A stretch of DNA of 64,000 nt from Phaeosaccion multiseriatum (Eukaryota > Protista > Ochrophyta, other classes). The position numbers were made by a program, and so were the translations under genes. A model generated the notes under the pieces. That model was not told the DNA's origin. It saw nothing but the letters and a program-made list of their open reading frames with translations, and searched no databases. The stretch lies in assembly GCA_965112735.1 (NCBI GenBank), contig OZ218953.1, positions 310,001 through 374,000 on the forward strand. The letters are read 5' to 3'. Shown here one piece after another: positions 31,627 to 53,470 of this stretch (within the stretch, counting starts at the first letter, position 1; each line of letters begins with the position of its first letter).

Positions 31627-31676
31627 CTACCCCTACTCAAACTATAACTAAATGAAAACGAAGCAATCAAAGGCAG

Positions 31677-32550
31677 AGGACACCAACGACACCGAGCAAA
31701 GCCACAGCGAACAACGAAGCGACAAGTCACCTCAAGCTCCTCTAATCACCAACATCCATCCCAATCACAACGGAATGAATGCCGTCAGCTCAGTACGAGT
31801 ATATATATAAAATAAAGAGAAAAAAGTACAACCCAAATACCATGGCTAGGCCACCAACGTGGACTAGAGAACGACTGCCCCAGCAGTTCCCTACTCATCA
31901 CCAACACCGACCAGAAAGGATGAGTGCCACACACTAGGATGCTACAGCCCCTCTGTAGCACCACCTTGACTTGCTTGTTTACACGCGCCTAGCTCCCCCC
32001 CGCGACAAATCCACATGCTAGTACCCTACGTTATCTTACTTAAGGGGGGCAACTCCACCTTCGCCCTAGACCCCCCTTGCCGGGGCACTCTATGAGGAGG
32101 CAACGCCCAAGCTCCCCTACTACCTACTCACCTATCCACTATCCACTAACTACAAGTATATGAATACGAACCAATAATGAAAGAAACAGGACACCAGCCA
32201 CAGCTAACAACGAAGAGACAAGTCCGAAGACACGCTCCTCTAATCACCAACATCCATCACAATCAGAACGGAATGAATGCCGCCAGCCAGCTCAGTACGA
32301 GAGTGCAAAACCCAGTCAGAGAAAAAAAGGTCTGACAAGGGAAGAACGCAACCCGACCCCCAAAGAATAATGCACTTAAAACAAAAGTACAACCCAAATA
32401 GCATGGCTGAGGCTACCAACGTAGAGAAAGACTGCCCCAGCAGTTCCCTACTCATCACCAACACCCACCAGAAAGGATGAGTGCCACCACACTAGGATGC
32501 TACAGCCCCTCTGTAGCACCACTTGCTTGTTTTCGTGTTCAACACGCGCC
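31677..32550. repeat. Degenerate ~0.5-kb tandem duplication downstream of MACPF gene copy 1 (also ~43765-44475)
   Basis: Blocks such as GCTCCTCTAATCACCAACATCCATC and CTACTCATCACCAACAC..CCAGAAAGGATGAGTGCCAC..CTAGGATGCTACAGCCCCTCTGTAGCACC occur at ~31736/32234 and ~31892/32447, and again after 43800 and 44160. Confidence 0.8.
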
Positions 32551-32719
32551 AACACCCCGCCTCGTCTAGCTAAGCTCCTTCGTACGAGGAATCACGCCCC
32601 AGCAGGTCAGCCGAGTCCAATGGCCGAAGAGAAAGGCGGCGCTTGTTGACGAACCCTTAGCTACTGCTCCGTTGTCGATCGGCCGTGCTCAGCTCTCCAG
32701 TCTCTCGGACTCGATCCCC

Positions 32720-35700
32720 TTACGAGATGGGCATGACTGTCCACTGAATCACCGACTGCTTGTTCACGGGTACACCCTTGACGGCGGCCATCATTGTCTT
32801 ATCCGAGCCGCGGTCCTTAGTGTCCTTCTTATCTGAAACAGACAGGGAGCCAGTCTCGCACGTGAGCGTGATCTGTGGGGCACACCACAGCCATAACATA
32901 GGCGGGTGAGGAAGGGAGGGGGGAGAGTGGAAGAGTGGAGCGGTGGAGGGGGGAGCAACAAGCGCAGGGGCGGAACAAGGTGGAAGGGAGGGAGCGAAGG
33001 AGGGAAGGAGGACGAGGGCGGGGGAGCGGGGGAGCAATTTAGGGAAGGGCAGGGGGGAGAGCAGGGAAAGGAGGGCGGTAGAGGAAGGAGCGAGTGAGGG
33101 GAAGAGAGAGAGAAGGGGGAAGGGGGGAGGGAGGCGGAGAGAAGAGAAAGGGGGTTGATGGCAAGACGGGTAGATCATAACCAAGAGGAATCAAGAGGAT
33201 CTGCTGCACTACTCAAGTGTGTGTCTGAAACTGCTATAGCTAGGGAGGCCAAGAGGAAGAGCAAGGAAGCATGAAAGGAAAGATGCGAAGCGGGCAAGGA
33301 AGGAAGGCTCCAGGCAGGGAAAACTATACACACAAAACAAACACAAAACAGACAGAGACGGTCGGAAGCGAAGGCACACGCACTCACCACGTCGCCGTAG
33401 CGGACACGCGTCTGATGCAGTGTGGGGGTACCTCCGATCGCTCTCTTAACGATGCGGATAGTCCACTTGGTCTTGGTCGCGTATGGCTTGACCATGATCT
33501 TGCCGTCTGGGATCTTGTAGTTGGTTAGATACAAGTTGTCCTTGGGGGCGCACTTGCTCTTGATCCTTTGACGGTGCGGGGCTTGGGCAGTCATGGCTCT
33601 TCCTTTCGGTCGGAGCTGATTTTGGGGGGTAAGCAAACACCGAGCGTTGGGAAGGGCGAACAAGAACGGCCAGTTTCAGTGCCAGCCAGTGCACGGACGG
33701 ATTCATCACACACCCCAAGTCAAGCAAAGACGGGAGAAGAGGGTATCAGCCAAGGTCAACGTCGAGTACTAACTAGCAGGATTGCAGGGCTACAGCCCCC
33801 ATCAGCCAAGCCTGACTTGCTTCATTCACACTCTTTTTCTTACTTTGCTTCCTATAGTGCAGGGTGAAGGGGAGTTCCAGAAATTGCATGCCGGGCACTT
33901 TTTCACTCCCTTACCATGTTCTTAACGAAGACTTCATCTCCGTGCTTGACCCCTCCGACGGTGGTTCCTGGGTTTTGCAGCTGCCATTGCGCCTCAACTT
34001 GCTCATCTTTAGCCGAGGCAACCGCCAAGGTGTCGTAAACAACTTCCTCGTTCTGGAAGGCCCATTTCTCCATTGCTTTCATCTGCCCGACGAACGTCTC
34101 CATTTGCCGAACGACTCCCTTCCCGTGGTTGTTATAGTACCGGTTACCGTTATTTCTGGTCCTCTTTCGGGTAGTCGTCTCGAACTTTCGAAGTCCAATG
34201 AGCCTTTTAGCTCGGGCATCTTACCCTTGGAGCCTAGTCTCCTCCCCTAATATGTAGGGGGGGGGGACGGTGGAGACACGGTGGAGACAACATCATTCAG
34301 CAAGAAGAAGCAAGTTCATGGGAGTTGGAGAGAAGAAGAGAGCGAACGAGAAGGCAGACGCACGTTATCTCACCTGGTCGCTGAAAGCGCGATACGCCGC
34401 CAGTATCTGCGTCTTTGCAGGCCGCAGAACTTGATCCTGTGACCACTTCAAGGTGTAGTAGTGCTGACCGTTCCTATCCTTGAACTTCTGAATGGCCTTC
34501 TCGACAATCTTCTCTCTACTGGCCAGCTGCTCGTCCGTCAGTGAGAAGTATACGGGCACACATTCCACTCAAATGTTAGTATCGTGGTATGGCAAGGAGC
34601 TAGGGATTTTCGAGACGCACAAAATGAGAGATCTGAAACATGTTAGCCTTGTGTCGCCTTGGCCACCACCTTCCTCTCCCCCTCCCCCCTCTCTTCCCTT
34701 TCTTTACTAAAGGAAATGATGACTTCTTTCAAAAACGAAATGATGAAACCATCGGGGCTCTGTGAAATCATCGCCATCGAGTCTCCTCCTGACTGAACTG
34801 AACTTCCTTTTCTCTAAGGCTCTACGGAGCAAACTTACCGGCACAGACCGGTCGTAGCGAGTGCGGACGGCAGAGTCAAGCAATTCCTTGGTTCCGACGC
34901 TCTCGAGGCTGAGGAGCGAGTGGTAGCCGTCGAACTGCAGCTCCGGGTGTTTTGCCCGCGTCGCGGCGTCTCCGAGGAAAAGATCCAGAAGGTATGGGGG
35001 TGCGTCCCTCTTGAAGCGCTCGGCCAGATCTGTCCAGTTGCCGTAGGAGAGGTCTTCACTCAGCTTCTTCACCTGCAGGACGGACTCGTCCTTGGCGACG
35101 TCAAGGCCGTCGATGAGATTAAAGTCGGTGGCGGCGTCCGTGAATCCGTCAAAAAACAGGTCGTTCCAGTTCTTGACGCTCAAGGGCTCCAGCTCGCTCA
35201 TATCTACGCAGCTCTTGACAGCGGCCTTCACTACGCTCGCGACGAAGGCTTCCTTCTTGGCGTCACCGTCGTCGCCTATTGGGGTGGGGCGGGGTCCAGC
35301 CAGGCACAGGCACAGAGAAAGGCGACGGGTGAGCTGCTACGCACATTTCCCCTGAGGTTGATTCTTACTTTGTTCATGATAGCACCCTTCTCACACACAT
35401 TAAGCACTTGAACGACCATCTCCCATTTGTGTGCTACGCAAAATACGCCGCCTTCTGGTGCCTTTCCGTGTTCGTTCTTGTCGCGGAGATGAAATCGACA
35501 ACAGGGGCGCGGAACGCTCCGACCGGCTGAAGTGTGTGTGTATATGTATGTGACTGTGGCCATCAATGGTGCGATGAGCTATGACCGCAGCAATACCAAG
35601 TGGGACACACACCCTTGCCTTAGCGAGAAGCTCGTGAGAATTGCCATCCTCCTTGCCTGAACATACCTTCCCAGTCGCCTGACTCGGCCGGCTTGGCCAC

Positions 35701-38700
35701 GACGAAGCAGAGCTCGCGCACGATCGTATCGAACGACTGCTCCACGAAGAGGGCACTCCTCACGAGTGTCCGTAGACTCGCAGAGGTGTCGGGGTTGCCC
35801 AGTAGCAGCGGTTGCCACACTCGAGCTCGCTGCTCCCAAGCCCTGGGCATACAGATGATCGTCAATACGGACCGGTATGGAAGGGGGGGTGAGATGCAAA
35901 GGTTCGTCAGTTTAGGGGGAGAGAGGCCGGCCGCCGCAGGCACTGCACGCGTACATGTGCGCTTCCGCAAAACTTCTGCCATCGTACTACGTACGCTTGC
36001 TCGCTTCTCTCTTACCTGTGGATAAGTAGAGCCGCGTTCTTGTATTCCTCGTCCACATCACTGATGACCTCCAGAAGGTCCCAGACAGGCACGAGAGCCT
36101 CTGCAGCCAGCCAGAGCAAAAGAAGGAGAGGGGAAGGGGGCAAGCAACAGGGAGGACACAGCCACAGCGATCGGGGGAGGGGGGTTGTGAGGATAAAATG
36201 CAGCTGCGACACACCACCCCCTGCCTAGCTACGCTACAGTACTTCCCTCTCCCTCCCTCACTCACTCACTCACTCACTCACTCACTCCCTCACTCTTTCC
36301 CTCTACTACAACACTCCTTCTGTCTCCCTCCCTCTTCACCCAGCCAGCCACTCTCACTCACCCAACGGGCCCCTGTCAATGCATGACCATGATCGGGTGT
36401 TCTGCAGCAGCTCCTCACCGAAGCCGTCCACTGAGGCAGCGTTTGGACCGAGTGACTGAGCGAGAGAGAAAAAATGAATGAAGGGGGGGGGGAGGGGGGT
36501 TGATGAGGATGTGCTGGTGTCTTCAAGTCTAACATGAACTGGGCTTCCTGCCCTCTCTCTCTTGCTATTTTACGTACTCACCTTGACCGTGGTCTCGAAG
36601 AAAGCCGTCTCCTCGCGTTCGTCTGTGTTCTCTCCCGTCGCGTTGGTCTTGAACTTCACCTTGGAGGTCTCTGTGCTTTTGCTGAAGTTGGCGCCAAACC
36701 CTCCACTGAGACTGAAACCCTTGATGCCTAAGCCTCCGCCCAAGCCCAGACTGTTTGGAAAAGACAAAAACACGTGTTGATTGTCATCGGGGGGAGTTGT
36801 CGTACAGGAGTTGGGTTGTTGGGTGCAGCCGGCCGGGTCATATCAAATGTGAGTGAAGCAAGAGAGGGCACATGTCTTGACAAGTTTGTTTCTTGTTCAA
36901 TAAAAAGGGACAATCGTAGCTACCCCGTACAACCTGTCAGCCTCTCACACCCCCCCCCCCCCCAAACTCACTCACTGACTCACCCCACGGCTTTCGACTT
37001 GCCCTTGGTGTTGCTGTTGTGCTCGCCGGCCTCTGCAAAAAGTTGCTCCGTGGAGACTGCTTTCTTGGAGCTCATGGTGGTGGTGCGGAAGAACACCCCT
37101 CCCAGCAAGTGCCTTCCCATAGAGACATCTGCAAAGGGAAGTGGAGGGGGGAAGGGGGTCGCACCCGAGGAGAGGCAGGGGTGGAGGAAGGAGGGAGAGA
37201 GAGGGAGCGAAAAGGGGCGAAAGAAGGGAGGGAGACGCGGAGGAGGCGAGTGTCAGAGTGTCAGAGTGGTCCTTTACTAGGGGCTCTTCCCCCGATACGG
37301 CCTCACTTACCATAAAAAAACAGCGACGGAAGTCAAAGCAATTGGCAAAGCAAGGCAAGCAAGGCAAAAGCAAGGGCGGAGGATGTAACTTACGTGAGCC
37401 GAACATGTCAAGGAACGCCTTGGCCTTGAGCGTGGTGTCGACCTCTTTGGCGTATTTCTTGGCCTCTTCCGTCAGCTTCATCTGGTCTCGCGGAATACGG
37501 AAGGTCCGCATGGGGCACTTGACATACTCCAGAATGATCGCCGTTTTGGCGAGGCCCTGTCTGGCCAACTCCTTGGTCTCTCTCTCTTGTTCCGCCTTGA
37601 CCTTTTCCTTTTGTCGTGTGTTACCCCCCCCTTTCGTCCCAGTCCCCGCCGCGCCAGGGCCACCAGGAAGAAGGCCAGGCTTCGTAAATGATGCCGACCC
37701 TCCCTTGGAAAGCCCAAACGACGTGACGCTGCTTTCGGCCACGGAAACTCCCGCAGAGGAGACGGTGCTGATGAAACTGCTCGCAGCTGATTCCTCAGTG
37801 GTCTTGAAGACGCGGCTTTCCAACCCGGTGTCGGGCCCCGTCCTGTGGTAACAGTGGTTGGTTGCAGGAGAGAAATAGGGGGCGAGCGAGAGGATGGAGG
37901 TCTAGCGAGTGACGTAGTAGGTTGAACACCATACAACAACAACAACAACAACAAAAACAACGAACAGACTCGTCCTTCCCCTCCACAGGCAGCCAGCGCC
38001 ATACTTACATTTCAACGAAGGTTGGTTTCTGCAGGAGCGGAGCGTAGGGGCGTTGGGCGATGGTGCCGTCGTCGAGGTCGCCAAAGAAGGACACACCGTA
38101 CAGAGCGATGCCCCCCGAAGCTCCAGCCACGAGATCTTCGTTGTTCTCATACGACTTCAGCACCCCGTTTCCGGTGGGGAAGGACAGAGCAGACTGGGCT
38201 TCAGCCTCTGCGAGCAGGCGCGCCGACCCTGCAAGAAAGAGGGGTGGAACAAGAAAGAACAAGAAGAGGTGGGAAGCGAGGCGAGGCGTGTGTCGGAGGG
38301 ATGGAAATGGATTCAAGCTTTCTTGGAACATCAGGCAGGGGGTTTTCCTAGTTCGGGCAAGACAAGGTGCGTTGTTCCGACGCATAGCTAGCTGGGCTTT
38401 GAACACTCGGGCCGCTCCTTCATCTCCCACCCACCTTGCAAATTGGCCTTCCAGTCCGCAGGCGGCTGTGCTGCCTGCCTGACCTCGTCGAGGCGCTGCG
38501 CCAACTCGTCCTCGCTCTTGTTCACGAGGTCCTGCAGGAGTCCATTGTATTGTTGGGGGATCATGTCAGAGTGAGGCGTGGGACAACCAATCGCAACGAG
38601 AACAGGTCAGGCCAGGGTACAGCCACCCATCCATCACACTCCAGCCACCAACCTTCCACTTTTACCGAGGCACTGCCCGTTCGTGCCGTTAGCCAAAGGC

Positions 38701-39251
38701 CAAGAGGTTAGAGGTCTTAGCCTGTGTTACAGCCATGCACGCCCCCTTATTCTACTGGCTGGACTGCTGCATGCAAACATAAATACATGGAGAAGAACAC
38801 TCCCGCTTCTTCGGCCGCTGATCCCTATCTCCCCCCCCTCCCCCCCCCCCCCCTCTCTTCCTCTTGCTTCTTCCTAGTCTTCTTTCCTTCCCAACAAAAC
38901 AAGAGCAAGGTAACATTTCCCTCTCCTTCCTAATTTCCTCTTACTTCTCTTGACTTACTTTGGTGTTGAGTTTGTCGAGCGCCGCTTGGGTCTTGTCGGC
39001 ATAGGCCTGAGCCTGCTTGACATGAGACGCCAGTTCACCCGCCGCAAAATTGGTTGGAGACTTTGGAAAAAGAATCCCAAGCGCACGCGAGAACGCTTCT
39101 GAAGCGGCAGGGCTTGATAGCAGACCCCCTAGCAGACCCCCAGGCGCACTGCTTTGTGCAGGCGGGGCAGCACCGCCGGGCCTGCTTCCGTTGTTTTGCA
39201 TCGCTTGGAGCTTGGCTCCCAGAATCCGGCTGCTGTTGGTGGTGGTGGTGG

Positions 39252-39318
<67 letters not shown>

Positions 39319-41047
39319 GGTGATGGTGGTCTCCTTCGTGACGATGGTTCGGACGTGCTCGCTAATGTCCGCGGCTTTGAACACTTTGAGCCCTTCCAGA
39401 ACCTCGGATAGCTCCATGCTCAAACCTTCGGGGCATGGAAGAGAAAGGGAGGAAGTAAGTGGCTGAGGGAGTGAGAAACCAAGGGAGTGAGCGACGGGGT
39501 GAGAGATGACTAAAAGTGAGAGAATGACTACATTAGTGGGCTGGACGAGAGAATGAGTGCGCACTGGTTGGAGGGGCGGGTTGGAATGGGGAGGAGAGAG
39601 AGATGTTCAGCTGTATACGATAATAACCGTGGCGCTTGCGACTCAGTCTCACCGTTGGCAAGTAGCTCTGAGCGAATGGCCGGGACTCCCGGCGCGGACG
39701 GCTCTGCGAACAGCTCCTTGATGAGCTGCGGGGAGAGAGAGAGAGAGACAGAGAGACAAGAGTGAGAGAGAGAGAAAAGGAGGTGAGAAACATGTGCGAA
39801 CGAGGTAAGGACTACTTAGACTAGGACCGAGTGACGTCTACCAGCATCGAACCAGAGAGGTTCTTACGCGCTGTGCATTAGCTTCATACATCTCAGAGTC
39901 ACAGAACCCTACCTACCTCGCGATCACTGGGTCCTGCAACTACGGCGGTGTTGTCCTCGCCCTCCTCATCGTATTCCTCGTCTTCTTCATCGGAGCCTTC
40001 ATCGTCGTCAAAATCCCCCTCCTCTTCTTCTCCTTCGGCTTCTTCTCCTTCGCTTTCCTTTCCCTCGTCCACCTCCGCATCTCCTTCCTGCGAGTCGTTG
40101 CCATCATCTAGCAGCAAGTCGGAACCGAGCAGGTCGTTGATGGCACTCCACTGCATGTGCTGCAGCTCCGTGACAGTCTTGACCTTGCTTAGCAAGTCCC
40201 TTGCCCACGCAGCGTTCACATTCACCCCTGCACAGGGTGTGGGGGGTAAGGGAAGTGAGGAAGCAAGTGAGGGAAGGAGGGAGTGTGTGAGTGGGCAAGT
40301 TAGACCAGTGAGTTGAGTTAAGCGAGTGGGAGAGTGAGTGAGTGAGTGAGTGAGTGAGTGAGTGAGTGAGTAATGAAGTGAAGCAGCTAAGGAGTGAGTG
40401 AGCCGCTTTGACGTACCACGGCTGAGGAGTGCACCTCTGAGCTGCAGCTCTCTTCCCAGAAGCAGGGTGACATCGTCCATCGCATCGTCCTTCTCGTCGG
40501 CTTTGTCGTCGTCGGAGATGGTCGGGACATCCAAGACACCTGCTCCACCACCGGGACAGCGAAACACAGAGGGGAGGAGCATGAGGTGCGGTTTTTCTTC
40601 AGGGTAGGCAGTAGGGTAGGTCTGCTCTGGCTGCCTTGGCTGTTGCTCACCTTGCTTCTTTAGGCCGTGCAGGTACACCGCAATGGCAGCGTTGTCTAGC
40701 GTGGCTAGGCCCATCTTCACCAAGACCAAACTCATGTCCTGGCCGACCTCGCCACGCTTTAGAATAGCCAGCAATGGGGGGGCCAGGGCCTCGTCCGCAA
40801 GCTTCTGGAGAGCAAAGCGGGAGGAGAGGCTAGCCGGCTTTACAGCAGCGACAGCCTCCTCCTCTCCAGCCGCAGCGGCGGGGGCACCAGAAGCAGCAAT
40901 AGCATACTCTTTCTTCTTTCTCTCGTCCTCTGCTTGTAGCAGCCCACGCAAACATCCCAAAACGAATCTCCTCTTTTCGGCCCCGCTAAGGCCGGCGCTT
41001 AGGGTCTCGATCTCCTTCACAGCAGCACTCACTGGATCCTCAGCCAT
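32720..41047 (-). CDS. GVIN1-like MACPF pore-forming domain protein with C-terminal beta-trefoil/MIR-like region, copy 1 (18 exons; 1-nt frameshift at ~34187)
   Basis: Spliced motifs ASGGIALYG, MTGPDTG, PMRTFRIPRDQMKLTEEA, FLDMFGSH|VSMGRHLLGGVFF, SLGP..WSCIDRGPL|EALVPVWDLL; C-terminal WQLQ..VKHGDEVF.KN and WTI..VRYGDVITL repeats. The junctions checked are GT-AG with consistent phase; exon 33915-34246 is 332 nt vs 333 nt in copy 2. Confidence 0.8.
39239..39329 (-). repeat. Coding (AAC)n/(ACC)n microsatellite: poly-Asn (~22) plus poly-Thr
   Basis: (TTG)n on the + strand; only 4 Asn at the equivalent site in copy 2 (~51217-51228). Confidence 0.9.
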
Positions 41048-42599
41048 CGTAGCCATAGACTAGCGGTGCGGCGGCAACGGTGTATGTGTGAGGTGTGTGA
41101 GGGACAAAATGGACCAAGATCTTCTTCACTTCTCCTTTCAGGCAGGCGGCATCACTTACAAGCAAGCAACTGGCTGGGTGAAGGGCGGTCCGTGACCAAA
41201 CTCGTTGAGCACCGACAACAGCAGCACCGGCGTTGAGAGAGCACAGAAGGGCGTGTGCTTTAGGGAGTGATGGAGTTACGGTGGGGGGTGGGGGGGGGGG
41301 ATTGGGGAAATCAAAAGGGGGGTATCCATTTTCTTTTCTTCCTTCAAATGCCGTGTAACTGCTGTAGATTCGGACCTACTGAAACTGAAACTGAAACTGA
41401 ATTATCCCCCCGCGGAGAGAGAGAGCGGAGAGGTGTGTATTTCCGGAGGAGCGGGAGACACTTTGCTTTGTCGACCCAAGTTGACCTGTCCGTCGCCCCC
41501 GCCCCGGTTTTTTCGTATTTCGCTGATGCCCCCTGTTTGCGCGCTCCATTAAACATTCCAGCAGCAGTAATGGCTTAGTGAAGGGTTGCTCATGGCAGGA
41601 AGGTGGCAGGGCTGGTAGTAGCAGCAGCAGTCAAGCAAAGAGAGGTACATTTCAAACCACCACACCACCAGCAGCAGCAGAGACAAATGGAGGAGAATGA
41701 AGAAGCTGTAGCGGGGCAGCACAAAAGGATGGAACAGCACCACCTGTGTGACAGTCCTGAAGAGATTTCTGGCGCACAGGGCTCTGAGAATACGAGTGGA
41801 AAGGCCACAGGAGCGCATGACGACGATGACAGTGATTGGGACGACGAGAGTTGGACGCAAGCCGTTGCTCTGGCAGATGAAGCCGCTGCGGCGGTAGTAT
41901 AACCAGCGACCGCTTCGAAACAGGGCACTCAAGCGGCAGTGGAGACTGAGTTTGCGACAATTGCCGCAGCACAGGAGGAGACGCGGTGAAACAATTGCAG
42001 ACAGCTAAGCAGAGATTGAAAATCGAGAAGGGGGGCTGTAGAAGATGCTTACGAGGAGGACGAGGCCGGCCCCTGAAGGGAATAAGCGAGAAGCTGCGTT
42101 GAATGGTGCAGCTAGGAAAGGAATTGATGAGGATTTGCTTCTCCCAGCGGAGAAGGAAGAGAAGCGAAAGAAGGACATGGAGGAGAGGAAAAGAAGGGCT
42201 GTGACTTGTATTCGAGCGCAGACAGGGTAGATGGTGCAAGTGGTGACCACTTCGTAGGGTTTTCTTCGCCGCCCCTTGGTTGCACGTCTAAGCGGTACGT
42301 TCTCAATGATTCTCCTCTTCCTTCTTGATGCCTGGCTGCTCTTGTCCACGCCCCCCGCCCACTCTGGGCCGCCCTTTCTGAACATACCTTGACACACTTA
42401 TTCCCAGTTGTTCTCGCCCCCTTTTTACATCTTTTTTTGTGCTAACAGGGGTGAGAAAGACGAGGATGAGGACGAGGAGGATGGAAATACGGGCGACAAG
42501 GGGGGGCGGTGGTGGTGGGGGAGGGTTTGGGAAGAAGAATAGACCACCAGCGCAGACTGAGTTCATCTAAGTAGCACTCGAGGCGGCAAGGGATCCAAA

Positions 42600-42825
42600 G
42601 GAAGGGTTGCCTACCTGGCAAACTCCCTACTACAGGGCCTCGACGCCAAGCCGCCAGTCTGAAGTGGGAGGGTATGCCCAACGTGACGTGTTTGTCTGGG
42701 CCCCCCACCTCTTCCACAACCTTGAAGAGTACCACCAGCAGCCTCTTTGCGCATGGGATGCATCGTCAGAGTGTGTACAAGCTAATGGGTGGACGTCGCC
42801 GCAGCGGGCTGTGTCTGTCACCATC
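42600..42825 (+). pseudogene. Possible transposon-associated domain remnant (DUF6729-like) in the inter-duplicate spacer
   Basis: RDVFVWAPHLFH..PLCAW..CVQANGWTSPQRAV resembles the F.W.P..CP..GW..PRRV pattern of DUF6729-type element proteins as remembered; it breaks into low-complexity GGA repeats. Confidence 0.3.
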
Positions 42826-43764: not shown

Positions 43765-46700
43765 AAAGTACAACCCAAATAGCAGGGTTGAGGCTAGGCC
43801 TACTCATCACCAACACCCACCAGAAAGGATGAGTGCCACCACACTAGGATGCTACGGCCCCTCTGTAGCACATACACACACACACACACCACTTGCTTGT
43901 TCCACACGCGCCTAGCTACCCCCCGCGACAAATCCACTTACCAATCCTACCTTATCTTACTTAAGGGGGGCAACTCCACCTTCACCCTAGACCCCCCTTG
44001 CCGGGGCACTCTATGAGGAGGCAACGCCCAACCTCCCCTTCTCCCCGTACCCACTAACTACAAGTATATGAATATGAACCAATAATGAAAGAAACAGGAC
44101 ACCAACGACACCGAGCAAAGCCACAGCTAGCAACGAAGAGACAACAAGTCCGAAGACACGCTCCTCTAATCACCAACATCCATCACAATCACACAACTGA
44201 ATGAATGCCGCCAGCTCAGTACGAGAGTGCAAAACCCAGTCAGAGAAAAAAAAGGTCTGACAAAGGGAAGAACGCAACCCGACCCCCAAAAGAATAATGC
44301 ACTTAAAACAAAAGTACAACCCAAATAGCATGGCTGAGGCTACCAACGTAGAGAAAGACTGCCCCAGCAGTTCCCTACTCATCACCAACACCCACCAGAA
44401 AGGATGAGTGCCACCACACTAGGATGCTACAGCCCCTCTGTAGCACCACTTGCTTGTTTTCGTGTTCAACACGCACCAACACCCCGCCTCGTCTAGCTAA
44501 GCTCCTTCGTACGAGGAATCACGCCCCAACAGGTCAGCCGAGTCCAATGGCCGAAAAGAAAGGCGCCGCTTGTTGACGAACCCTTAGCTACTGCTCCGTT
44601 GTCGATCGGCCGTGCTCAGCTCTCCAGTCTCTCGGACTCGATCCCCTTACGAGATGGGCATGACTGTCCACTGAATCACCGACTGCTTGTTCACGGGTAC
44701 ACCCTTGACGGTGGCCATCATTGTCTTACCCGAGCCGCGGTCCTTAGTGTCCTTCTTATCTGAAACAGACAGGGAGCCAGTCTCGCACGTGAGCGTGATC
44801 TGTGGGGCACACCACAGCCATAACATAGGCGAGCGAAGGAAGGGAGGGGGGAGAGTGGAGCGGTGGAGGGGGGGAGCAACAAGGCGCAGGGGCGGAACAA
44901 GGTGGAAGGGAGGGAGCGAAGGAGGACGAGGGCGGGGGAGCGGGGGAGCAATTTAGGGAGCAGGGAAAGGAGGGCGGTAGAGGAAGGAGCGGGGGGGGGG
45001 GGGGAGGAGCGAGTGAGGGGAAGAGAGGGAGAAGGGGGAAGGGGGGGAGGGAGGCGGAGAGCAGAGAAAGGGGGTTGATGGCAAGACGGGTAGATCATAA
45101 CCAAGAGGAATCAAGAGGATCTGCTGCACTACTCAGATGGCCCCAACGGTGTGATTCTGAAACTGGTATAGCTAGGTACTAGGCCAAGAGGAAGAGCAAG
45201 GAAGCATGAAAGGAAAGATGCGAAGCGGGCAAGGAAGGAAGGCTCAAGGCAGGGAAAACTATACACACAAAACAAAGACAAAACAAACAGAGACGGTCGG
45301 AAGCGAAGGCACACGCACTCACCACGTCGCCGTAGCGGACACGCGTCTGATGCGGTGTGGGGGTACCTCCGATCGCTCTCTTAACGATGCGGATGGTCCA
45401 CTTGGTCCTGTTCGCGTATGGCTTGACCATGATCTTGCCGTCTGGGATCTTGTAGTTGGTTAGATACAAGTTGTCCTTGGGGGCGCACTTGCTCTTGATC
45501 CTTTGACGGTGCGGGGCTTGGGCAGTCATGGCTTTTCCTTTCGGTCGGAGCTGATTTTGGGGGGTAAGCAAACACCGAGCGTTGGGAAGGGCGAACAAGA
45601 ACGGCCAGTTTCAGTGCCAGCCAGTGCACGGCCGGATTCATCACACACCCCAAGTTAAGCAAAGACGGGGGAAGAGGGTATCAGCCAAGGTCAACGTAGA
45701 GTACTAACTAGCAGGATTGCAGGGCTACAGCCCCCATCAGCCAAGCCTGACTTGCTTCATTCGCGCTCTTTTTCTTACTTTGCTTCCTATAGTGCAGGGT
45801 GAAGGGGAGTTCCAGAATTTGCATGCCGGGCACTGTTCCACTCCCTTACCTTGTTCTTAAGGAAGACTTCATCTCCGTGCTTGACCCCTCCGACGGTGGT
45901 TCCTGGGTTTTGCAGCTGCCATTGCGCCTCAACTTGCTCATCTTTAGCCGAGGCAACCGCGAAGGTGTCGTAAACAACTTCCTCGTTCTGGAAGGCCCAT
46001 TTCTCCATTGCTTTCAACTGCGGGATGAACGTCTCCATTTGCCGAACGACTCCCGCCCCCTTGTTGTTAAAATACCGCTTTCCTTTATTTCTGTTCTTCT
46101 TTCGAGTAGTCTTCTCGAACTTATCGAAGTCCAATGAGCCTTTTAGCTCGGGCATCTTACCCGTGGAGCCTAGTCTCCTCCCCTAATATTGTATTTCGGG
46201 GTCACGGTGGAGACACGGTGGAGACAACATCATTCAGACGGTGGAGACAACATCATTCAGCAAGAAGAAGCAAGTTCAGAGTTGGAGAGAAGAAGAGAGC
46301 GAACGAGAAGGCAGACGCAAGTTATCTCACCTGGTCGCGCAAAGCGCGATACTTCGCCCCTATCTCCTTCTTTAAAGGCCACAGAACTTGTTCCCGTTTG
46401 CGGTCCAAGGTGTAGTAGTGGCTGCGGCCTCTATCCTTGAACTTCAGAATGGCCTTTTCGACAATCTTGTCATCTCTACTGGCCAGCTGCTCGTCCGTCA
46501 GTGAGAAGTACACAATCGTGGTATGAGGGATATTCGAGAGGCATGAATGAGAGATCTGAAACATGATAGCCTTGTGTCGCCTTGGCCAACCCGTTCCTCT
46601 CCCCCTCCCCCCTCTCTTCCCTTTCTTTCCTATAAAAGGAAATGATGACTTCTTTCAAAAACGAAATGATGAAACCATCGGAGCTTGTGAATCTGATTGA

Positions 46701-49700
46701 ACTGAACTTCCTTTCCTCGAAGGCTCTACGGAGCAAACTTACCCACAGAGACCGGTCGTGGCGAGTGCGGAAGGCAGAGTCAAGCACTTTTTCGCTTCCG
46801 ACGCTCTCGAGGCTGAAGAGCGAGCTGTCGCCGTCGTGCTGCAGCTCCGGGTGGTTTGCCCGCGTCGCGGCGTCTCCGAGGAAAAGATCCAGAAGGTATG
46901 GGGGTGCGTCCCTCTTGAAGCGCTCGGCCAGATCTGTCCAGTTGCCGTAGGAGAGGTCTTCACTCAGCTTCTTCACCTGCAGGACGGACTCGTCCTTGGC
47001 CACGTCAAGGCCGTCGATGAGATCAAAGTCGGTGGCGGCGTCCCTGAATCCGTCAAAAAACAGGTCGTTCCAGTTCGTGACGCTCAAGGGCTCCAGCTCG
47101 CTCATATCCTCGCAGCTCTTCACAGCGGCCTTCACTACGCTCGCAACGAAGGCTTCCTTCTTGGCGTCACCGTCGTCGCCTATTGGGGTGGGGCGGGGTC
47201 CAGCCAGGCACAGGCACAGAGGAAGGAGAGGTTTGATTCTTGCTTTGTTCATGATAGCACTTGAACGACCTCGTCCCTTGCCACACACAATAAGTACTTG
47301 AACGACCATCTCCCACTTGTGTGCTACGCAAAAGACGCTGCCTTATTGTGCCTTTCCGTGTTCGTTTTTGTCGCGGAGACCAAATCGACAACAAGGGCGC
47401 GGAACGCTCCGACCGGCTGAAGTGTGTGTGTATGTGACCGCGGCCATCAATGGTGCGATGAGCTATGACCGCAGCAATACCAAGTGGGACACACACCCTT
47501 GCCTTAGCGAGAAGCTCGTGGGACACACACACCCTTGCCTTAGCGAGAAGCTCGTGAGAATTGCCATCCTCCTTGCCTGAACATACCTTCCCAGTCGCCT
47601 GACTCGGCCGGCTTGGCCACGACGAAGCAGAGCTCGCGCACGATCGTATCGAACGACTGCTCCACGAAGAGGGCACTCCTCACGAGTGTCCGTAGACTCG
47701 CAGAGGTATCGGGGTCGCCCAGTAGCAGCGGTTGCCACACTCGAGCTCGCTGCTCCCAAGCCCTGGGCATATAGATGATCGTCAATACCACCGGTATGGA
47801 AACGGGGGTGAGATGCAAAGGTTCGTCAGTTTAGGGGGAGAGAGGCCGGCCGCCGCAGGCACTGCACGCGTACGTGCGCTTCCGCAAAACTTCTGCCATC
47901 ATACTACGTACGCTTGCTCGCTTCTCTCTTACCTGCGGATAAGTTGAGCCGCGTTCTTGTACTCCTCGTCCACATCACTCATGACCTCCAGGAGGTCCCA
48001 GACAGGCACGAGAGCCTCTGCAGCCAGCCAGAGCAAAAGAAGGAGAGGGGGAGGGGGCAAGCAAGAGGGAGGACACAGCCACAGTGATCGGGGGAGGGGG
48101 GTTGTGAGGATAAAATGCAGCTGCGACACACCACCCCCTGCCCAGCTACGCTACAGTCCATCCCTCTCCCTCCCTCCCTCCCTCATTCACTCACTCCCTC
48201 ACTCTTTCCCTCTACTACTACACTCCTTCCGTCTCCCTCCCTCCTCACCCAGCCAGCCACTCTCACTCACCCAACGGGCCCCTGTCAATGCATGACCATG
48301 ATCGGGTGTTCTGAAGCAGCTCCTCACCGAAGCCGTCCACTGAGGCAGCGTTTGGACCGAGTGACTGAGCGAGAGAGAAAAAATGAATGAAGGGGGGGGG
48401 GGGGATTGATGAGGATGTGCTGGTGTCTTCAAGTCTAACATGAGCTGGGCTTCCTGCCCTCTCTCTCTTGCTCCTTTACGTACTCACCTTGACCGTGGTC
48501 TCGAAGAAAGCCGTCTCCTCGCGTTCGTCTGTGTTCTCTCCCGTCGCGTTGGTCTTGAACTTCACCTTGGAAGTCTCTGTGCTTTTGCTGAAGTTGGCGC
48601 CAAACCCTCCACTGATACCGAGACCCTTGATGCTTAAGCTTCCGCCCAAGCCCAGACTGTTTGGAAAAGACAAAAACACGTGTTGATTGTCATCGGGGGG
48701 AGTTGTCGTACAGGAGTTGGCTTGTTGGGTTTAGCCGGCCGGGTCATATCAAATGTGAGTGAAGCAAGAGAGGGCACATGTCTTGACAAGTTTGTTTCTT
48801 GTTCAATAAAAAGGGACAATCGTAGCTACCCCGCACACTGTCAGCCTCTCACCCCCCCCCCCAAAACTCACTCACTAACTCACCCCACGGCTTTCGACTT
48901 GCCCTTGGTGTTGCTGTTATGCTCGCCCGCCTCTGCAAAAAGTTGCTCCGTGGAGACTGCTTTCTTGGAGCTCATGGTGGTGGTGCGGAAGAACACCCCT
49001 CCCAGCAAGTGCCTTCCCATAGAGACATCTGCAAAGGGAAGTGGAGGGGGGAAGCGGGTCGCACCCGAGGAGAGGCAGGGGGTGGAGGAAGGAGGGAGAG
49101 AGAGGGAGCGAAAAGGTGCGAAAGAAGGGAGGGAGACGCGGAGGAGGCGAGTGTCAGAGTGTCAGAGTGGTCCTTTACTAGGGGCTCTTCCCCCGATACG
49201 GCCTCACTTACCATAAAAAAACAGCGACGGAAGTCAAAGCAAAGCAAGGCAAGCAAGGCAAAAGCAAGGGCGGAGGATGTAACTTACGTGAGCCGAACAT
49301 GTCAAGGAACGCCTTGGCCTTGAGCGTGGTGTCGACCTCTTTGGCGTATTTCTTGGCCTCTTCCGTCAGCTTCATCTGGTCTCGCGGAATACGGAAGGTC
49401 CGCATGGGGCACTTGACATACTCCAGAATGATCGCCGTTTTGGCGAGGCCCTGTCTGGCCAACTCCTTGGTCTCTTTCTCTTGTTCCGCCTTGACCTTTT
49501 CCTTTTGTCGTGTGTTACCCCCCCCTTTCGTCCCAGTCCCCGCCGCGGCAGGGCCACCAGGAGGGCCAGGCTTCGTAAATGATGCCGACCCTCCCTTGGA
49601 AAGCCCAAACGACGTGACGCTGCTTTCGGCTACGGACACTCCCGCAGAGGAGACGGTGCTGATGAAACTGCTCGCAGCTGATTCCTCAGTGGTCTTGAAG

Positions 49701-51791
49701 ACGCGGCTTTCCAACCCGGTGTCGGGCCCCGTCCTGTGGTAACAGTGGTTGGTTGCAGGAGAGAAATAGGGGGCGAGCGAGAGGATGGAGGTCTAGCGAG
49801 TGACGTAGGTTGAGCACCATACAACAACAACGACATCAACAACAACAAAAACAGCAACAACAGCAGCAACAACAACAAAAACAACAACAGCAACAACGAA
49901 CAGACTCGCCCTTCCCCTCCCCAGCCAGCCAGCGCCATACTTACATTTCAACGAAGGTTGGCTTCTGCAGGAGCGGAGCGTAGGGGCGTTGGGCGATGGT
50001 GCCGTCGTCGAGGTCGCCAAAGAAGGACACACCGTACAGAGCGATGCCCCCCGAAGCTCCAGCCACGAGATCTTCGTTGTTCTCATACGACTTCAGCACC
50101 CCGTTTCCGGTGGGGAAGGACAGAGCAGACTGGGCTTCAGCCTCTGCGAGCAGGCGCGCCGACCCTGCAAGAAAGAGGGGTGGAACAAGAAAGAACAAGA
50201 AGAGGTGGGAAGCGAGGCGAGGCGTGTGTCGGAGGGATGGAAATGGATTCAAGCTTTCTTGGAACATCAGGCAGGGGGTTTTCCTAGTTCGGGCAAGACA
50301 AGGTGCGTTGTTCCGACGCATAGCTAGCTGGGCTTTGAACACTCGGGCCGCTCCTTCATCTCCCACCCACCTTGCAAATTGGCCTTCCAGTCCGCAGGCG
50401 GCTGTGCTGCCTGCCTGACCTCGTCGAGGCGCTGCGCCAACTCGTCCTCGCTCTTGTTCACGAGGTCCTGCAGGAGTCCATTGTATTGTTGGGGGATCAT
50501 GTCAGAGTGAGGCGTGGGACAACCAATCGCAACAAGAACAGGTCAGGCCAGGGTACAGCCACCCATCCATCACACTCCAGCCACCACCCTTCCACTTCTA
50601 CCGAGGCACTGCCCGTTCGTGCCGTAAGCCAAAGGCCAAGAGGTTAGAGGTCTTAGCCTGCCTGTGTTACAGCCATGCACGCCCCCTTATTCTACTGGCT
50701 GGACTGCTGCATGCAAACATAAATACACGGAGAAGAACACTCCCACTTCTTCCGCCGCTGATCCCTATCTCCCCCCACTCCCCCCCCCCCCTCTCTCTTC
50801 CTCTTCTTCCTAGTCTTCTTTCCTTCCCAACAAAACAAGAGCAAGGTAACATTTCCCTCTCCTGCCTGGTGTGATAAACGCCGAGTCAGTAGGCCGGCAA
50901 CCTACACCTCTTACTTCTCTTGACTTACTTTGGTGTTGAGTTTGTCGAGCGCCGCTTGGGTCTTGTCGGCATAGGCCTGGGCCTGCTGGACGTGAGACGC
51001 CATTGTATCCGCCGCAATATTGGCTTGAGACTTTGGCAAGTATTTCCCAAGCGCACGCGAGAACGCGCCTGAAGCGGCAGGGCTTGATATGAGACCCCCA
51101 AGCGCACTGCTTATGCCGCCAGCACGAGGCGGGGCAGCACCGCCGGGCCTGCTTCCGTTGTTTTGCATCGCTTGGAGCTTGGCTCCAAGAAGCCGGCTGC
51201 TGTTGGTGGTGGTGGTGTTGTTGTTGTTCGTGGTGATGGTGGTCTCCTTCGTGACGATGGTTCGGACGTGCTCGCTAATGTCCGCGGCTTTGAACACTTT
51301 GAGCCCTTCCAGAACCTCGGATAGCTCCATGCTCAAACCTTCGGGGCATGGAAGAGAAAGGGAGGAAGTAAGTGGCTGAGGGAGTGAGAAACCAAGCAAG
51401 GGAGTGAGCGACGGGGTGAGAGAGTACGTGAGGGAGTGAGAAACCAAGCTAGGGAGTAAGCGACGGGGTGAGAGAGTGACTAACAGTGAGGGAGTGAGTG
51501 AGTGAGTGAATGGGTGAGTGAGGAAGGAGTGAGTGACTGGGTGGGTGGGTGAGTGACAGAATGGTGATTTTTCTGAGCTACATTAGTGGGCTGAACAAGA
51601 GAATGAGTGCGCACTGGTTGTGGGGGCGGGTTGGAATGGGGAAGAGAGGAGATGTTCAGCTGTATACGATAATAACCGTGGCGCTTGCAACCCTCCCTGC
51701 CTCAGTCTCACCGTTGGCAAGTAGCTCTGAGCGAATGGCCGGGACTCCCGGCGCGGACGGCTCTGCAAATAGCTCCTTGATGAGCTGCGGG

Positions 51792-51823
<32 letters not shown>

Positions 51824-53470
51824 CAGAGAGACAGAGTGAGAGAGAGAGAAAAGGAGGTGAAAAACATGTGCGAACGAGGTAAGGACTACTTAGACTAGGA
51901 CCGAGTGACGTCTACCAGCATCGAACCAAAGAGGTTATTATACTCTTTAGCTTCATACTTCTCGGATTCCAGAACCCTACCTTACCTCGCGATCACTGGG
52001 TCCTGCAACTACGGCGGTGTCGTCCTCGCCCTCCTCATCGTCTTCCTCGTCTTCTTCATCGGAGCCTTCATCCTCGTCAAAATCCCCCTCCTCTTCTTCT
52101 CCTTCGGCTTCTTCTCCTTCGCTTTCCTTTCCCTCGTCCACCTCCGCATCTCCTTCCTGCGAGTCGTTGCCATCATCTAGCAGCAAGTCGGAACCGAGCA
52201 GGTCGTTGATGGCACTCCACTGCATGTGCTGCAGCTCCGTGATAGTCTTGACCTTGCTTAGCAAGTCCCTTGCCCACGCAGCGCTCACATTCACCCCTGC
52301 ACAGAGTGTGGTGAGTATAGTGAGGAAGCAAGTGAGGGAAGGAGGGAGTGTGTGAGTGGGCAAGTTAGACTAGTGAGTTGAGTTAAGCGAGTGGGAGAGT
52401 GAGTGAGTGAGTGAGTGAGTAATGATGTGAAGCAGCTAAAGAGTGAGGGAGCCGCTTTGACGTACCACGGCTGAGGAGTGCACCTCTGAGCTGCAGCTCT
52501 CTTCCCAGAAGCAGGGTGAGATCGTCCATCGCGTCGTCCTTCTCGTCCGCTTTGTCGTCGTCGGAGATGGCGGGGACATCCAAGACACCTGCTCCACCAC
52601 CGGGACAGCGAAACGCAGAGGGGAGGAGCATGCATGAGGTGCGGTTTTTCTTCAAGGTAGGGTGGGGTTAGTTGCTCACCTTGCTGCTTTAGGCCGTGCA
52701 GGTACACCGCAATGGCAGCGTTGTCTAGCGTGGCTAGGCCCATCTTCACCAAGACCAAACTCTTGTTCTGGCCGACCTCGGCACGCTTTAGAATAGCCAG
52801 CAATGGGGGGGCCAGGGCCTCGTCCGCAAGCTTCTGGAGAGCAAAGCGGGAGGAGAGGCTATGTGCCGGCTTTACAGCAGCGACAGCCTCCTCCTCTCCA
52901 GCCGAAGCGGCGGGGGCACCAGAAGCAGCAATAGCATACTCTTTCTTCTTTCTCTCGTCTTCAGCTTGTAGCAGCTCACTCAAACATCCCAAAACGAATC
53001 TCCTCTTTTCGGCCCCGCGAAGGCCGGCGCTTAAAGTCTCGATCTCCTTCACAGCAGCACTCACTGGATCCTCAGCCATCGTAGCATAGACTAGCGGTGC
53101 GGCGGCGGCGGTGTATGTGTGAGGTGTGTGAAAAGCAAAGGGGGTATCTTCAATTTTCGCTCACTTCTCCTTCTCTCAGGCAGGCCCTTTAAACCCCCTT
53201 CAACAAAGCAAGCAACGAAAGGCCGTCCGTGACCAAACTCGTTGAGCACCGACTACAGCAGCACCGGCGTTGAGAGAGCACAGAAGGGCGCTGTGCTTTA
53301 GGGAGTGATGGAGTGATGGGAAGGAAGAGGGGGGGGAAGGGGTAATTTCCTTTCCCCCCCCCAACTGCCAAAACTGCGATAATCATACAACTATTTTTGT
53401 TGGGGGGTAAAGATCTAACATTTTTTTTTTGTAACTGCATCGCTGTAGATTCCTACTGAAACTGAAACTA
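43765..53470. repeat. Segmental duplication copy 2 (~9.7 kb)
   Basis: Starts after a poly-T/A tract (AAAGTACAACCCAAATA shared with ~31824); last shared block GCTGTAGATTC..CCTACTGAAACTGAAACT at ~41361-41392 and ~53442-53469. Confidence 0.95.
44647..53079 (-). CDS. GVIN1-like MACPF pore-forming domain protein with C-terminal beta-trefoil/MIR-like region, copy 2 (18 exons, apparently intact)
   Basis: Same exon chain as copy 1; ATG 53079 (MAEDPVSAAVKEIETL); MACPF core exons ~47933-50164; exon 45850-46182 is in frame; TAA at 44647-44649. Confidence 0.82.

What the first reader, a model, noticed from the sequence alone, without database searches (positions are those of the whole stretch)
34374..34960. 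Hypervariable coding patches between otherwise near-identical paralogues (diversifying-selection signature)
Seen: exon 34374-34526 (LASRE-KIVEKAIQKFKDRNGQHYYTLKWSQDQVLRPAKTQILAAYRAFSDQ) and exon 46331-46486 (LASRDDKIVEKAILKFKDRGRSHYYTLDRKREQVLWPLKKEIGAKYRALRDQ) differ at 18 of 51 residues plus one indel. The end of the preceding exon (QFDGYHSLLSLESVGTKELLDSAVRTRYDRSVP vs QHDGDSSLFSLESVGSEKVLDSAFRTRHDRSLW) and the start of the next also differ. By contrast, 38005-38430 vs 49941-50366, which includes an intron, is almost base-identical. Inference: this helical region is a specificity or sensor surface in an arms race, as in NLR and allorecognition genes.
Basis: partly seen in the sequence, partly recalled or inferred. 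Interest (0 to 1): 0.75.

Follow-up and report, generated by a model that had tools for sequence, protein, structure and literature searches.

The report
Fast-changing exon in duplicated algal gene
Two neighbouring copies of an alga-specific gene are nearly identical over most of their length, but one small exon near the tail has collected amino-acid changes about three to four times faster than the introns beside it, which points to selection for difference, though what that part of the protein meets is unknown.

Summary
The flagged pieces are exons 10-12 of a 13-exon gene on the minus strand. The gene lies in a ~9.5 kb tandem duplication (copy 1 31.7-41.3 kb, copy 2 43.8-53.3 kb), and a third copy sits on contig 10.

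- Exon 11 differs at 18 of 51 residues plus one codon indel.
- Between the tandem copies its nonsynonymous divergence (0.217) is 3.8 times that of the flanking introns (0.068, p=2e-5). Its synonymous divergence is not significantly raised.
- A per-codon test gives 18 changed codons against 7.8 expected (P=0.0006).
- The changes split 12:12 between the two lineages.
- The core exons are under purifying selection.

Gene conversion is real too: there is a 571-bp identical tract, and an exon-1 patch where copy 2 matches copy 3. It does not explain exon 11.

ML dN/dS (1.4-2.3) is never significantly above 1, copy 1 carries a frameshift in exon 12, and only three sequences exist.

The protein has no Pfam hit exon by exon, and its tail has no real relatives among 1.84 billion proteins. 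At least eight paralogues share the core but carry LRR or LRR/ricin tails; one tandem pair of those shows pN/pS 3.0.

It is not an NLR. A perforin-like core is my motif reading only. Earlier scan notes report similar exon-over-intron variability elsewhere in this genome.

The parts
31665..41276 (.). Duplication unit 1 (copy 1, 'c1')
   Evidence: Self-BLAST of the window and global alignment; 8785 aligned bases, 4.1% mismatches against unit 2.
43799..53314 (.). Duplication unit 2 (copy 2, 'c2')
   Evidence: A third unit lies at G000:C10:345714-354490.
33840..39417 (-). Gene copy 1. 13 exons: E1 39417-38959, E2 38531-38435, E3 38228-38009, E4 37842-37394, E5 37128-36984, E6 36750-36578, E7 36430-36362, E8 36100-36016, E9 35842-35667, E10 35275-34839, E11 34526-34374, E12 34246-33915, E13 33851-33840
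   Evidence: Three-way alignment. Every junction is AG..GT in all three copies. The frame is lost in E12.
45775..51330 (-). Gene copy 2, intact 916-codon reading frame. E1 51330-50929, E2 50467-50371, E3 50164-49945, E4 49733-49288, E5 49028-48884, E6 48656-48484, E7 48339-48271, E8 48017-47933, E9 47762-47587, E10 47179-46743, E11 46486-46331, E12 46182-45850, E13 45786-45775
   Evidence: open frame across all 13 exons, ending in a stop in E13.
34374..34526 (-). Exon 11 of copy 1: the hypervariable exon (51 codons, phase 0-0)
   Evidence: c1-c2 d=0.227 against introns 0.070 and 0.075. pN 0.217, pS 0.119, intron 0.068. 18 amino-acid-changed codons, 2 synonymous-only codons.
46331..46486 (-). 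Exon 11 of copy 2 (52 codons)
   Evidence: Same calls. 12 c1-derived, 12 c2-derived and 6 unresolved differences when polarised with copy 3.
34074..34955 (-). Variable zone of copy 1 (codons 712-860 in copy-2 numbering): tail of E10, all of E11, first half of E12, with introns 10 and 11 between them
   Evidence: Sliding windows. c1-c2 pN/pS 2.08, or 2.60 up to the frameshift. Amino-acid identity is 71% here against 97% just upstream.
46009..46859 (-). Variable zone of copy 2
34187..34188 (-). Site of the 1-nt deletion in E12 of copy 1 (frameshift). The shifted frame stops at 34081-34079
   Evidence: Copies 2 and 3 both have a base here.
38027..38597 (.). 571-bp tract identical to 49963-50533 (spans E2, intron 2 and most of E3): recent gene-conversion tract
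   Evidence: longest permuted run 382 bp. Intron 2 has 0 of 194 differences.
39006..39155 (-). Exon-1 patch, the densest c1-c2 difference (38 per 150 bp). Here copy 2 resembles copy 3, so this is ectopic conversion or old divergence, not the E11 type
   Evidence: mismatches per 100 are c2-c3 4, c1-c2 20. pS (0.126) is raised along with pN (0.098).
39899..41056 (-). Separate upstream gene (acidic C-terminus) duplicated along with the unit. Its counterpart is 51977-53079
   Evidence: The frame change in copy 2 falls in an evident intron, so the gene is not broken.

Best explanation
The flagged exons belong to a real, lineage-restricted protein-coding gene of a stramenopile-type microalga. It is present as two tandem copies and one dispersed copy. 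Gene conversion keeps most of the ~9.5 kb units alike. A bounded zone of about 150 codons in the orphan C-terminal module, centred on the 51-codon exon 11, has gained amino-acid replacements on both tandem lineages at about 2.6-3.8 times the local neutral rate. The sequences on either side are conserved. The most likely cause is positive (diversifying) selection on an exposed part of a tail module that sets what the protein binds or senses. Selection also removes conversion events that would erase the difference. Shown: the gene model, the coding constraint, the exon-over-intron excess, its two-lineage origin, and the mosaic of conversion tracts. Inferred: that the zone is a contact surface, that the shared core is a perforin-like (MACPF-type) pore former, and that the family acts in recognition or defence.
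For: (1) Gene reality and constraint: 13 exons with AG..GT borders in all three copies, and open frames in copies 2 and 3. All 7 exonic indels between copies 2 and 3 are multiples of 3, against 12 of 49 in introns. (2) E11 against its introns: c1-c2 0.227 vs 0.070/0.075; c2-c3 0.623 vs 0.144/0.138; c1-c3 0.612 vs 0.139/0.186. (3) c1-c2 E11: pN 0.217, pS 0.119, intron 0.068. N against intron OR 3.8, p=2e-5; S against intron not significant. (4) Per-codon test, robust to multi-nucleotide events: 18 changed codons against 7.8 expected, P=0.0006. Variable zone: 32 against 15.6. The conserved head of E10 (5 against 21.3) and the core (12 against 28.8) lie far below expectation. (5) Variable zone pN/pS is 2.1-2.6, with pS equal to the intron rate. 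(6) Differences split 12:12 between the two tandem lineages. (7) No other E11-like sequence in the genome could have served as donor. (8) Family context: the paralogues keep the core but carry LRR or LRR plus ricin-B tails. In the C1 tandem pair the tail has pN/pS 3.0 (p=9e-6) while the core exon has pN 0.018 against pS 0.091.
Against: ML codon models give omega 2.25, 1.39 and 1.67 for E11, none significantly above 1. Only three sequences exist and there are no population data. The zone was delimited after looking at the data. Nine of the 18 changed codons differ at 2-3 bases, so some changes may be single complex events. Against copy 3, synonymous sites in E11 and E12 are raised as well (pS 0.34-0.38 vs intron 0.13), which selection on amino acids alone does not predict. 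Copy 1 has a frameshift in E12. Gene-wide omega against copy 3 is about 1. There is no expression evidence. The folds of E10 and E11 are of low confidence.
Confidence: 0.55

Rival explanations
1. Relaxed constraint plus clustered mutation. E11 and its surroundings are a dispensable or disordered linker. Copy 1 is a decaying pseudogene. A few complex multi-nucleotide events make the exon look hypervariable without any selection for change.
For: Copy 1 frameshift in E12. Omega is not significantly above 1. Gene-wide omega against copy 3 is about 1. Half of the changed codons carry 2-3 differences. AF2 confidence is low.
Against: Neutral decay cannot exceed the intron rate, yet the per-codon count is 18 against 7.8 expected. 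The intact copy 2 changed as much as copy 1. All indels in E11 are in frame in the three copies, and 14 anchor residues are invariant. The rest of copy 1's E12 is still 94% identical to copy 2 in the copy-2 reading frame.
Confidence: 0.17
2. Patchy gene conversion on an old duplication, with no selection. E11 escaped the conversion events that homogenised the rest, so it simply shows the old neutral divergence.
For: Conversion is demonstrably active: a 571-bp identical tract, an exon-1 patch where copy 2 matches copy 3, and intron divergence between c1 and c2 ranging from 0 to 0.075. Synonymous divergence of E11 against copy 3 is raised.
Against: Introns 10 and 11, which abut E11, are not raised in any of the three comparisons. 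For c1-c2 the synonymous rate of E11 is not significantly above the intron rate, and the changed codons split 18 replacement to 2 silent. A tract boundary that falls by chance on both exon borders in three copies is unlikely.
Confidence: 0.15
3. A local mutational hotspot or targeted mutagenesis raises the mutation rate inside this exon, independent of selection.
For: Synonymous sites in E11 are raised against copy 3 (p about 0.001-0.005), and the c1-c2 point estimate (0.119 vs 0.068) leans the same way. Multi-nucleotide clusters are present. Earlier scan notes report exon-over-intron variability in other families of this genome (unverified).
Against: The c1-c2 synonymous excess is not significant. 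A hotspot should not spare the first 12 and last 8 bases of the exon and both introns so sharply. No repeat, template or enzyme for this is seen near the locus. The N:S codon ratio of 18:2 needs selection as well.
Confidence: 0.06
4. Assembly artefact: the two 'copies' are collapsed or mis-joined haplotypes, or the differences and the frameshift are sequencing errors.
For: The frameshift is a single-base deletion and could be an error. No reads are available.
Against: Both units lie on one contig with a unique 2.5 kb spacer and unique flanks. The differences are substitutions clustered in coding sequence with in-frame indels, not homopolymer noise. A third copy on another contig shows the same pattern.
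Confidence: 0.03

Closest known systems
Ectocarpus ROCO-LRR and NB-ARC-TPR candidate receptors (Zambounis et al. 2012, PMC3341825)
   Same: Stramenopile alga. Clustered paralogues with high turnover. Variability is concentrated in individual small exons of the presumed ligand-binding part, and diversifying selection was inferred exon by exon.
   Different: There the variable exons each encode one LRR or TPR unit and are shuffled. Here the variable exon is a single non-repeat orphan segment, with no exon shuffling and no ROC-COR or NB-ARC domain. The LRR-bearing members of this family are paralogues, not this gene.
MHC peptide-binding exons with homogenised introns (established knowledge, not tested here)
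   Same: Exons are more diverged than the introns beside them, raised synonymous divergence is tightly linked to the selected codons, and recombination or conversion acts on the flanks.
   Different: MHC concerns alleles kept by balancing selection within a population. Here the comparison is between three paralogues of one genome, with no polymorphism data.
Plant NLR / R-gene clusters (birth-and-death evolution with gene conversion and hypervariable LRR residues; established knowledge)
   Same: Tandem paralogues, mosaic conversion tracts, and amino-acid excess restricted to a sensor part next to a conserved part.
   Different: No NB-ARC, TIR or CC domain was found in any piece. The variable part is not an LRR.
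MACPF/perforin-type proteins with C-terminal targeting domains, e.g. plant CAD1 in immunity (bioRxiv 10.1101/2021.01.28.428637, listed)
   Same: By my reading of the translation, the core has an FGSH..GG motif preceded and followed by Ser/Gly-rich amphipathic stretches. The family attaches binding-type tails (LRR, ricin-B) after it.
   Different: No HMM, PDB or Atlas support at exon level. The motif spacer is one residue longer than the textbook pattern. The fold is untested.

Membership tests
Genes under diversifying (positive) selection | dN/dS significantly above 1 in the region | tested here: inconclusive
   ML omega for E11 is 2.25, 1.39 and 1.67, with LRT p 0.19-0.55. Counting method in the variable zone gives pN/pS 2.1-2.6, one-sided p about 0.03, with the zone chosen after looking.
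Genes under diversifying (positive) selection | Replacement rate above an independent neutral yardstick (flanking introns) | tested here: met
   c1-c2 E11 pN 0.217 against intron 0.068, OR 3.8, p=2e-5. Per-codon count 18 against 7.8 expected, P=0.0006.
Genes under diversifying (positive) selection | Reading frame and splice sites maintained (the gene is not a pseudogene) | tested here: met
   Copies 2 and 3 are open across 13 exons. Exon indels are 7 of 7 in frame against 12 of 49 in introns. Copy 1 fails this test: frameshift at 34187/34188.
Genes under diversifying (positive) selection | Changes recur on independent lineages | tested here: met
   12 c1-derived, 12 c2-derived and 6 unresolved differences in E11. 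All three pairwise comparisons peak at E11.
Genes under diversifying (positive) selection | Excess of fixed replacements over polymorphism (McDonald-Kreitman test), or site models on many orthologues | not testable with these tools
   No strain or orthologue data. E10 has no relatives in 1.84 billion representatives.
   For E11, introns 10 and 11 are at 0.07 (c1-c2) and 0.14-0.19 (against c3), while the exon is at 0.23 and 0.61-0.62. The condition is met for the exon-1 patch (pS 0.126, pN 0.098, intron 0.032).
   571-bp and 358-bp identical runs against a permuted maximum of 382 and a 99.9th percentile of 319. Copy 2 is close to copy 3 at 39206-39006. Conversion operates at the locus but does not account for E11.
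MACPF / perforin-like pore formers (PF01823) | Match to the family HMM at or above its cut-off | tested here: not met
   No hit for any exon piece even at E up to 10. PF01823 against the whole genome in six frames gave no candidate. The domain would be split over 5-6 short exons, so this test has little power.
MACPF / perforin-like pore formers (PF01823) | Signature motif (Y/W)-G-(T/S)-H-(F/Y)-x6-G-G between two amphipathic membrane-inserting segments | tested here: inconclusive
   The translation reads F-G-S-H-V, then seven residues, then G-G across the E4/E5 junction. Ser/Thr/Gly/Ala-rich stretches lie in E4 and E6. FGS is invariant in 7 paralogues. The resemblance is recalled from memory and the spacer is one residue too long.
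MACPF / perforin-like pore formers (PF01823) | MACPF/CDC fold (bent central sheet with two helical clusters) | not tested
   This needs the spliced protein, which has no reference and was left out. PDB sequence searches with E4 and with a 7-sequence E4 profile found nothing. The Atlas was blank.
NLR-type immune receptors | Central NB-ARC or NACHT nucleotide-binding domain | tested here: not met
   No such domain in any exon piece of this gene or in the long ORFs of the paralogues.
NLR-type immune receptors | C-terminal LRR (or other repeat) sensor | tested here: not met
   E9-E13 of this gene have no LRR and show no significant similarity to the LRR tails of the paralogues. LRR and ricin-B are present only in the sister members.

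The most novel reading that the evidence does not exclude
The gene belongs to an alga-specific 'executioner plus sensor' family: a conserved perforin-like pore-forming core joined to interchangeable, diversifying tails (LRR plus ricin-B lectin in most members, an orphan helical module with a hypervariable exon in these three). The family would be a previously unseen kind of innate-immune or self/non-self recognition protein in photosynthetic stramenopiles, in which ligand recognition by the tail releases the pore-former.
Probability: 0.15. Interest if true: 0.8.

Novelty: new variant of a known kind. Interest (0 to 1): 0.5.

Why it matters
Very little is known about how microalgae recognise viruses, parasites or each other. 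This locus gives a concrete, testable candidate: a family found only in this lineage, with a constrained core and tails that change faster than neutral sequence in two independent sub-families (the orphan tail here, the LRR/ricin tail on contig 1). If the core proves to be a pore former, the family would link recognition to membrane attack in a single polypeptide. [quoted passage not shown] If it does not, the locus is still a clean small example of selection and gene conversion acting side by side, with one patch of each kind in the same gene.

Tried and rejected
1. Family assignment exon by exon gave nothing usable: Pfam, NCBIfam, PADLOC, PF01823 against the genome (22), PDB sequence search with E4 and with a 7-sequence E4 profile (31, 39), and the ESM Atlas with E4 and E10 (32, 71).

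2. The exhaustive search with E10 returned two giant RCC1-repeat proteins. Their score comes from 7-8 weak repeats (25-29 bits, 28-30% identity each), so I rejected them as spurious.

3. A word search with the linker of an LRR-type paralogue found nothing.

4. I suspected 'reciprocal decay', with the upstream gene broken in unit 2 and this gene broken in unit 1. I rejected it because the indels in the upstream gene lie in an evident intron with non-3n indels in all three copies.

5. A donor for E11 elsewhere in the genome: none found.

6. AF2 folds of E11 and E10 alone were of too low confidence for a fold search, so no fold search was run and variable residues could not be mapped to a surface. 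A helical-wheel test of the invariant hydrophobic residues in the first 19 residues of E11 was not significant (P=0.07).

7. The spliced (joined) protein was not searched, folded or compared in any tool. Exon codons were concatenated in scripts only to count substitutions.

8. Nothing in the window looks human.
Full report
WHAT IS THERE

The window is G000:C4:310001-374000 of a 67-Mb, 22-contig assembly. Self-comparison shows a tandem segmental duplication, 31665-41276 against 43799-53314. A third copy of the whole unit lies at C10:345714-354490 in the opposite orientation. I call the three copies c1, c2 and c3.

GENE MODEL

A three-way alignment in gene sense (window minus strand) gives a 13-exon gene. 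Every acceptor is AG and every donor is GT in all three copies. Copy 2 reads open for 916 codons. Copy 3 is open too. Copy 1 lacks one base in exon 12, between 34188 and 34187, and its shifted frame stops at 34081-34079.

The 'preceding exon' is E10 and the 'next' is E12.

The gene is under coding constraint. Between c2 and c3 all 7 exonic indels are multiples of three, against 12 of 49 intronic ones, at similar lengths of sequence.

- E11 differs at 18 of 51 residues plus one codon indel.
- The near-identical block exists. 38027-38597 is identical to 49963-50533 over 571 bp, longer than the longest run (382 bp) in 2000 permutations.
- The E11 window has 31 mismatches per 150 bp, against a permuted maximum of 20.

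SELECTION OR PATCHY CONVERSION?

Divergence by segment is the key table. E11 is 3 to 4.5 times more diverged than both flanking introns in every comparison:

- c1-c2: 0.227 against 0.070 and 0.075
- c2-c3: 0.623 against 0.144 and 0.138
- c1-c3: 0.612 against 0.139 and 0.186

For the recent tandem pair, E11 has pN 0.217, pS 0.119 and intron 0.068. Replacement sites exceed introns (OR 3.8, p=2e-5). Synonymous sites do not exceed them significantly (p=0.28). The core exons E2-E9 show the opposite: pN 0.011 against intron 0.027, p=0.004.

Nine of the 18 changed codons differ at two or three bases, so I repeated the test per codon.

- E11: 18 amino-acid-changed codons against 7.8 expected at the intron rate (P=0.0006), with only two synonymous-only codons.
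- Wider variable zone: 32 against 15.6.
- Conserved head of E10: 5 against 21.3.

The variable zone spans codons 712-860 (c1 34955-34074), that is the last ~35 codons of E10, all of E11 and the first half of E12. Its pN/pS is 2.1, or 2.6 up to the frameshift, with pS equal to the intron rate. The 156 codons just upstream have pN/pS 0.30.

Polarising with c3 assigns 12 E11 changes to c1, 12 to c2 and leaves 6 unresolved, so this is not decay of the broken copy alone. No further E11-like sequence exists in the genome to act as a donor.

WHAT WEAKENS THE SELECTION READING

- An ML codon model gives omega 2.25, 1.39 and 1.67 for E11, never significantly above 1. The whole gene runs at omega about 1 against c3.
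- Against c3, synonymous sites of E11 and E12 are raised too (pS 0.34-0.38 and 0.22-0.23, against introns at 0.09-0.14). Possible reasons are deep linked divergence kept apart by selection, under-estimated intron divergence in gappy alignments, or saturation.
- Only three sequences exist, and the zone was chosen after seeing the data.

CONVERSION IS ALSO REAL

Besides the identical tracts, the densest c1-c2 patch is not E11. It lies in exon 1 (39006-39155, 38 differences per 150 bp). There c2 is close to c3 (4 mismatches per 100, against 20 for c1-c2), and synonymous sites are raised along with replacements (pS 0.126, pN 0.098, intron 0.032). E11 does not fit it, since no pair of copies is alike there and the introns are quiet. 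So one gene holds one patch of each kind.

WHAT THE PROTEIN IS

- Searched exon by exon by reference, no piece hits Pfam, NCBIfam or PADLOC.
- E10 has no real relative among 1.84 billion representatives. The two hits are repeat-inflated.
- The Atlas and PDB sequence searches are blank.
- Single-exon AF2 models are all-helical but of low confidence: E11 is one helix at pLDDT 65, E10 is at pLDDT 42. 'Helical' is therefore only weakly supported.

The translation shows F-G-S-H-V, then seven residues, then G-G across the E4/E5 junction. Ser/Gly-rich amphipathic stretches lie before and after it. I recognise this as resembling the MACPF/perforin signature and its two membrane-inserting segments. This is a lead from memory. 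No tool supports it, and PF01823 finds nothing in the genome in six frames.

The spliced protein has no reference. That is the obvious missing computation.

FAMILY CONTEXT

E10 and E12 occur only in these three copies. The core exons E3, E4, E5 and E7 recur, with the same exon structure, in at least eight further paralogues. These lie on C1 (6.575-6.611 Mb), C10 (359 kb and 369 kb, next to c3), C3 and C12.

In seven of them the core is followed by one long exon that carries LRRs, and in four of those a ricin-B lectin domain follows the LRRs. The tail of our gene shows no significant similarity to those tails.

The same evolutionary pattern recurs independently.

- C1 tandem pair: the LRR/ricin tail has about 135 replacement against 14 silent differences (pN/pS 3.0, p=9e-6). 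The core exon of the same pair has pN 0.018 against pS 0.091.
- C10 pair: 1.3, not significant.
- Older C3-C12 pair: 0.64.

A conserved core with fast-changing tails is therefore a property of the family, which raises my confidence in the selection reading for E11.

COMPARISON WITH WHAT IS KNOWN

The nearest precedent in stramenopile algae is the Ectocarpus ROCO-LRR and NB-ARC-TPR families, where single repeat-encoding exons show diversifying selection (PMC3341825). Here the variable exon is not a repeat and no NB-ARC or ROC-COR domain is present, so the gene is not an NLR or a ROCO.

The pattern of an exon more diverged than its introns is classically known from MHC peptide-binding exons (established knowledge, not tested here).

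Earlier notes of this scan report similar exon-over-intron variability in ankyrin, cysteine-repeat and other families of this same genome. They are unverified AI notes. I use them as context only.

VERDICT

The diversifying-selection reading is the best-supported explanation (about 0.55) but is not proven. The NLR analogy holds only for evolutionary behaviour, not for membership. Interest is moderate.

Noticed in passing
G000:C1:6572000-6616999 (L007-L011); C10:358000-372999 (L006, L012); C3:610000-619999 (L013); C12:1260000-1269999 (L014): At least eight further paralogues share the core exons (E3, E4, E5, E7). Seven of them carry a long single-exon tail with LRRs, and four of those also a ricin-B lectin domain. 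The C1 tandem pair's tails show pN/pS 3.0 (p=9e-6), while its core exon is constrained.
   Followed up: partly
window 39249-39320 (c1) vs 51216-51240 (c2): An (AAC)n codon repeat in exon 1 encodes 22 consecutive Asn in copy 1 but only 4 in copy 2 (54-nt in-frame length difference). Copy 3 has none.
   Followed up: no
window 39006-39155: Exon-1 patch where copy 2 is nearly identical to the contig-10 copy while copy 1 differs from both. This is evidence for gene conversion between chromosomes.
   Followed up: partly
L007:2838-3803 (G000:C1:6574837-6575802): A chimeric family member: an unrelated ~260-residue N-terminal ORF runs straight into the last third of the E4-like exon (ending in the conserved FGSH), skipping the Ser-rich segment.
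   Followed up: no
window 39899-41056 and 51977-53079: A separate upstream gene with a strongly acidic C-terminus is duplicated along with the unit. One of its introns holds a (CTCA)n microsatellite that reads through as 'SLTH' repeats in the ORF lists.
   Followed up: partly
window 42600-43700: The spacer between the two units is GGA/GAG/GGC-rich low-complexity sequence. It gives long artificial Gly/Glu/Arg ORFs on both strands.
   Followed up: no
window 28190-28560, 55595-55840, 58935-59110: Three short tandem-repeat arrays (78-90% identity between units) were seen in the self-BLAST. The 28.5 kb and 55.7 kb arrays also match each other in inverted orientation.
   Followed up: no
G000:C10:345714-354490 and C10:358000-369600: The dispersed copy 3 lies about 5 kb from two LRR/ricin-type paralogues in the opposite orientation. 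Contig 10 may therefore be the ancestral family cluster from which the contig-4 pair derives.
   Followed up: no
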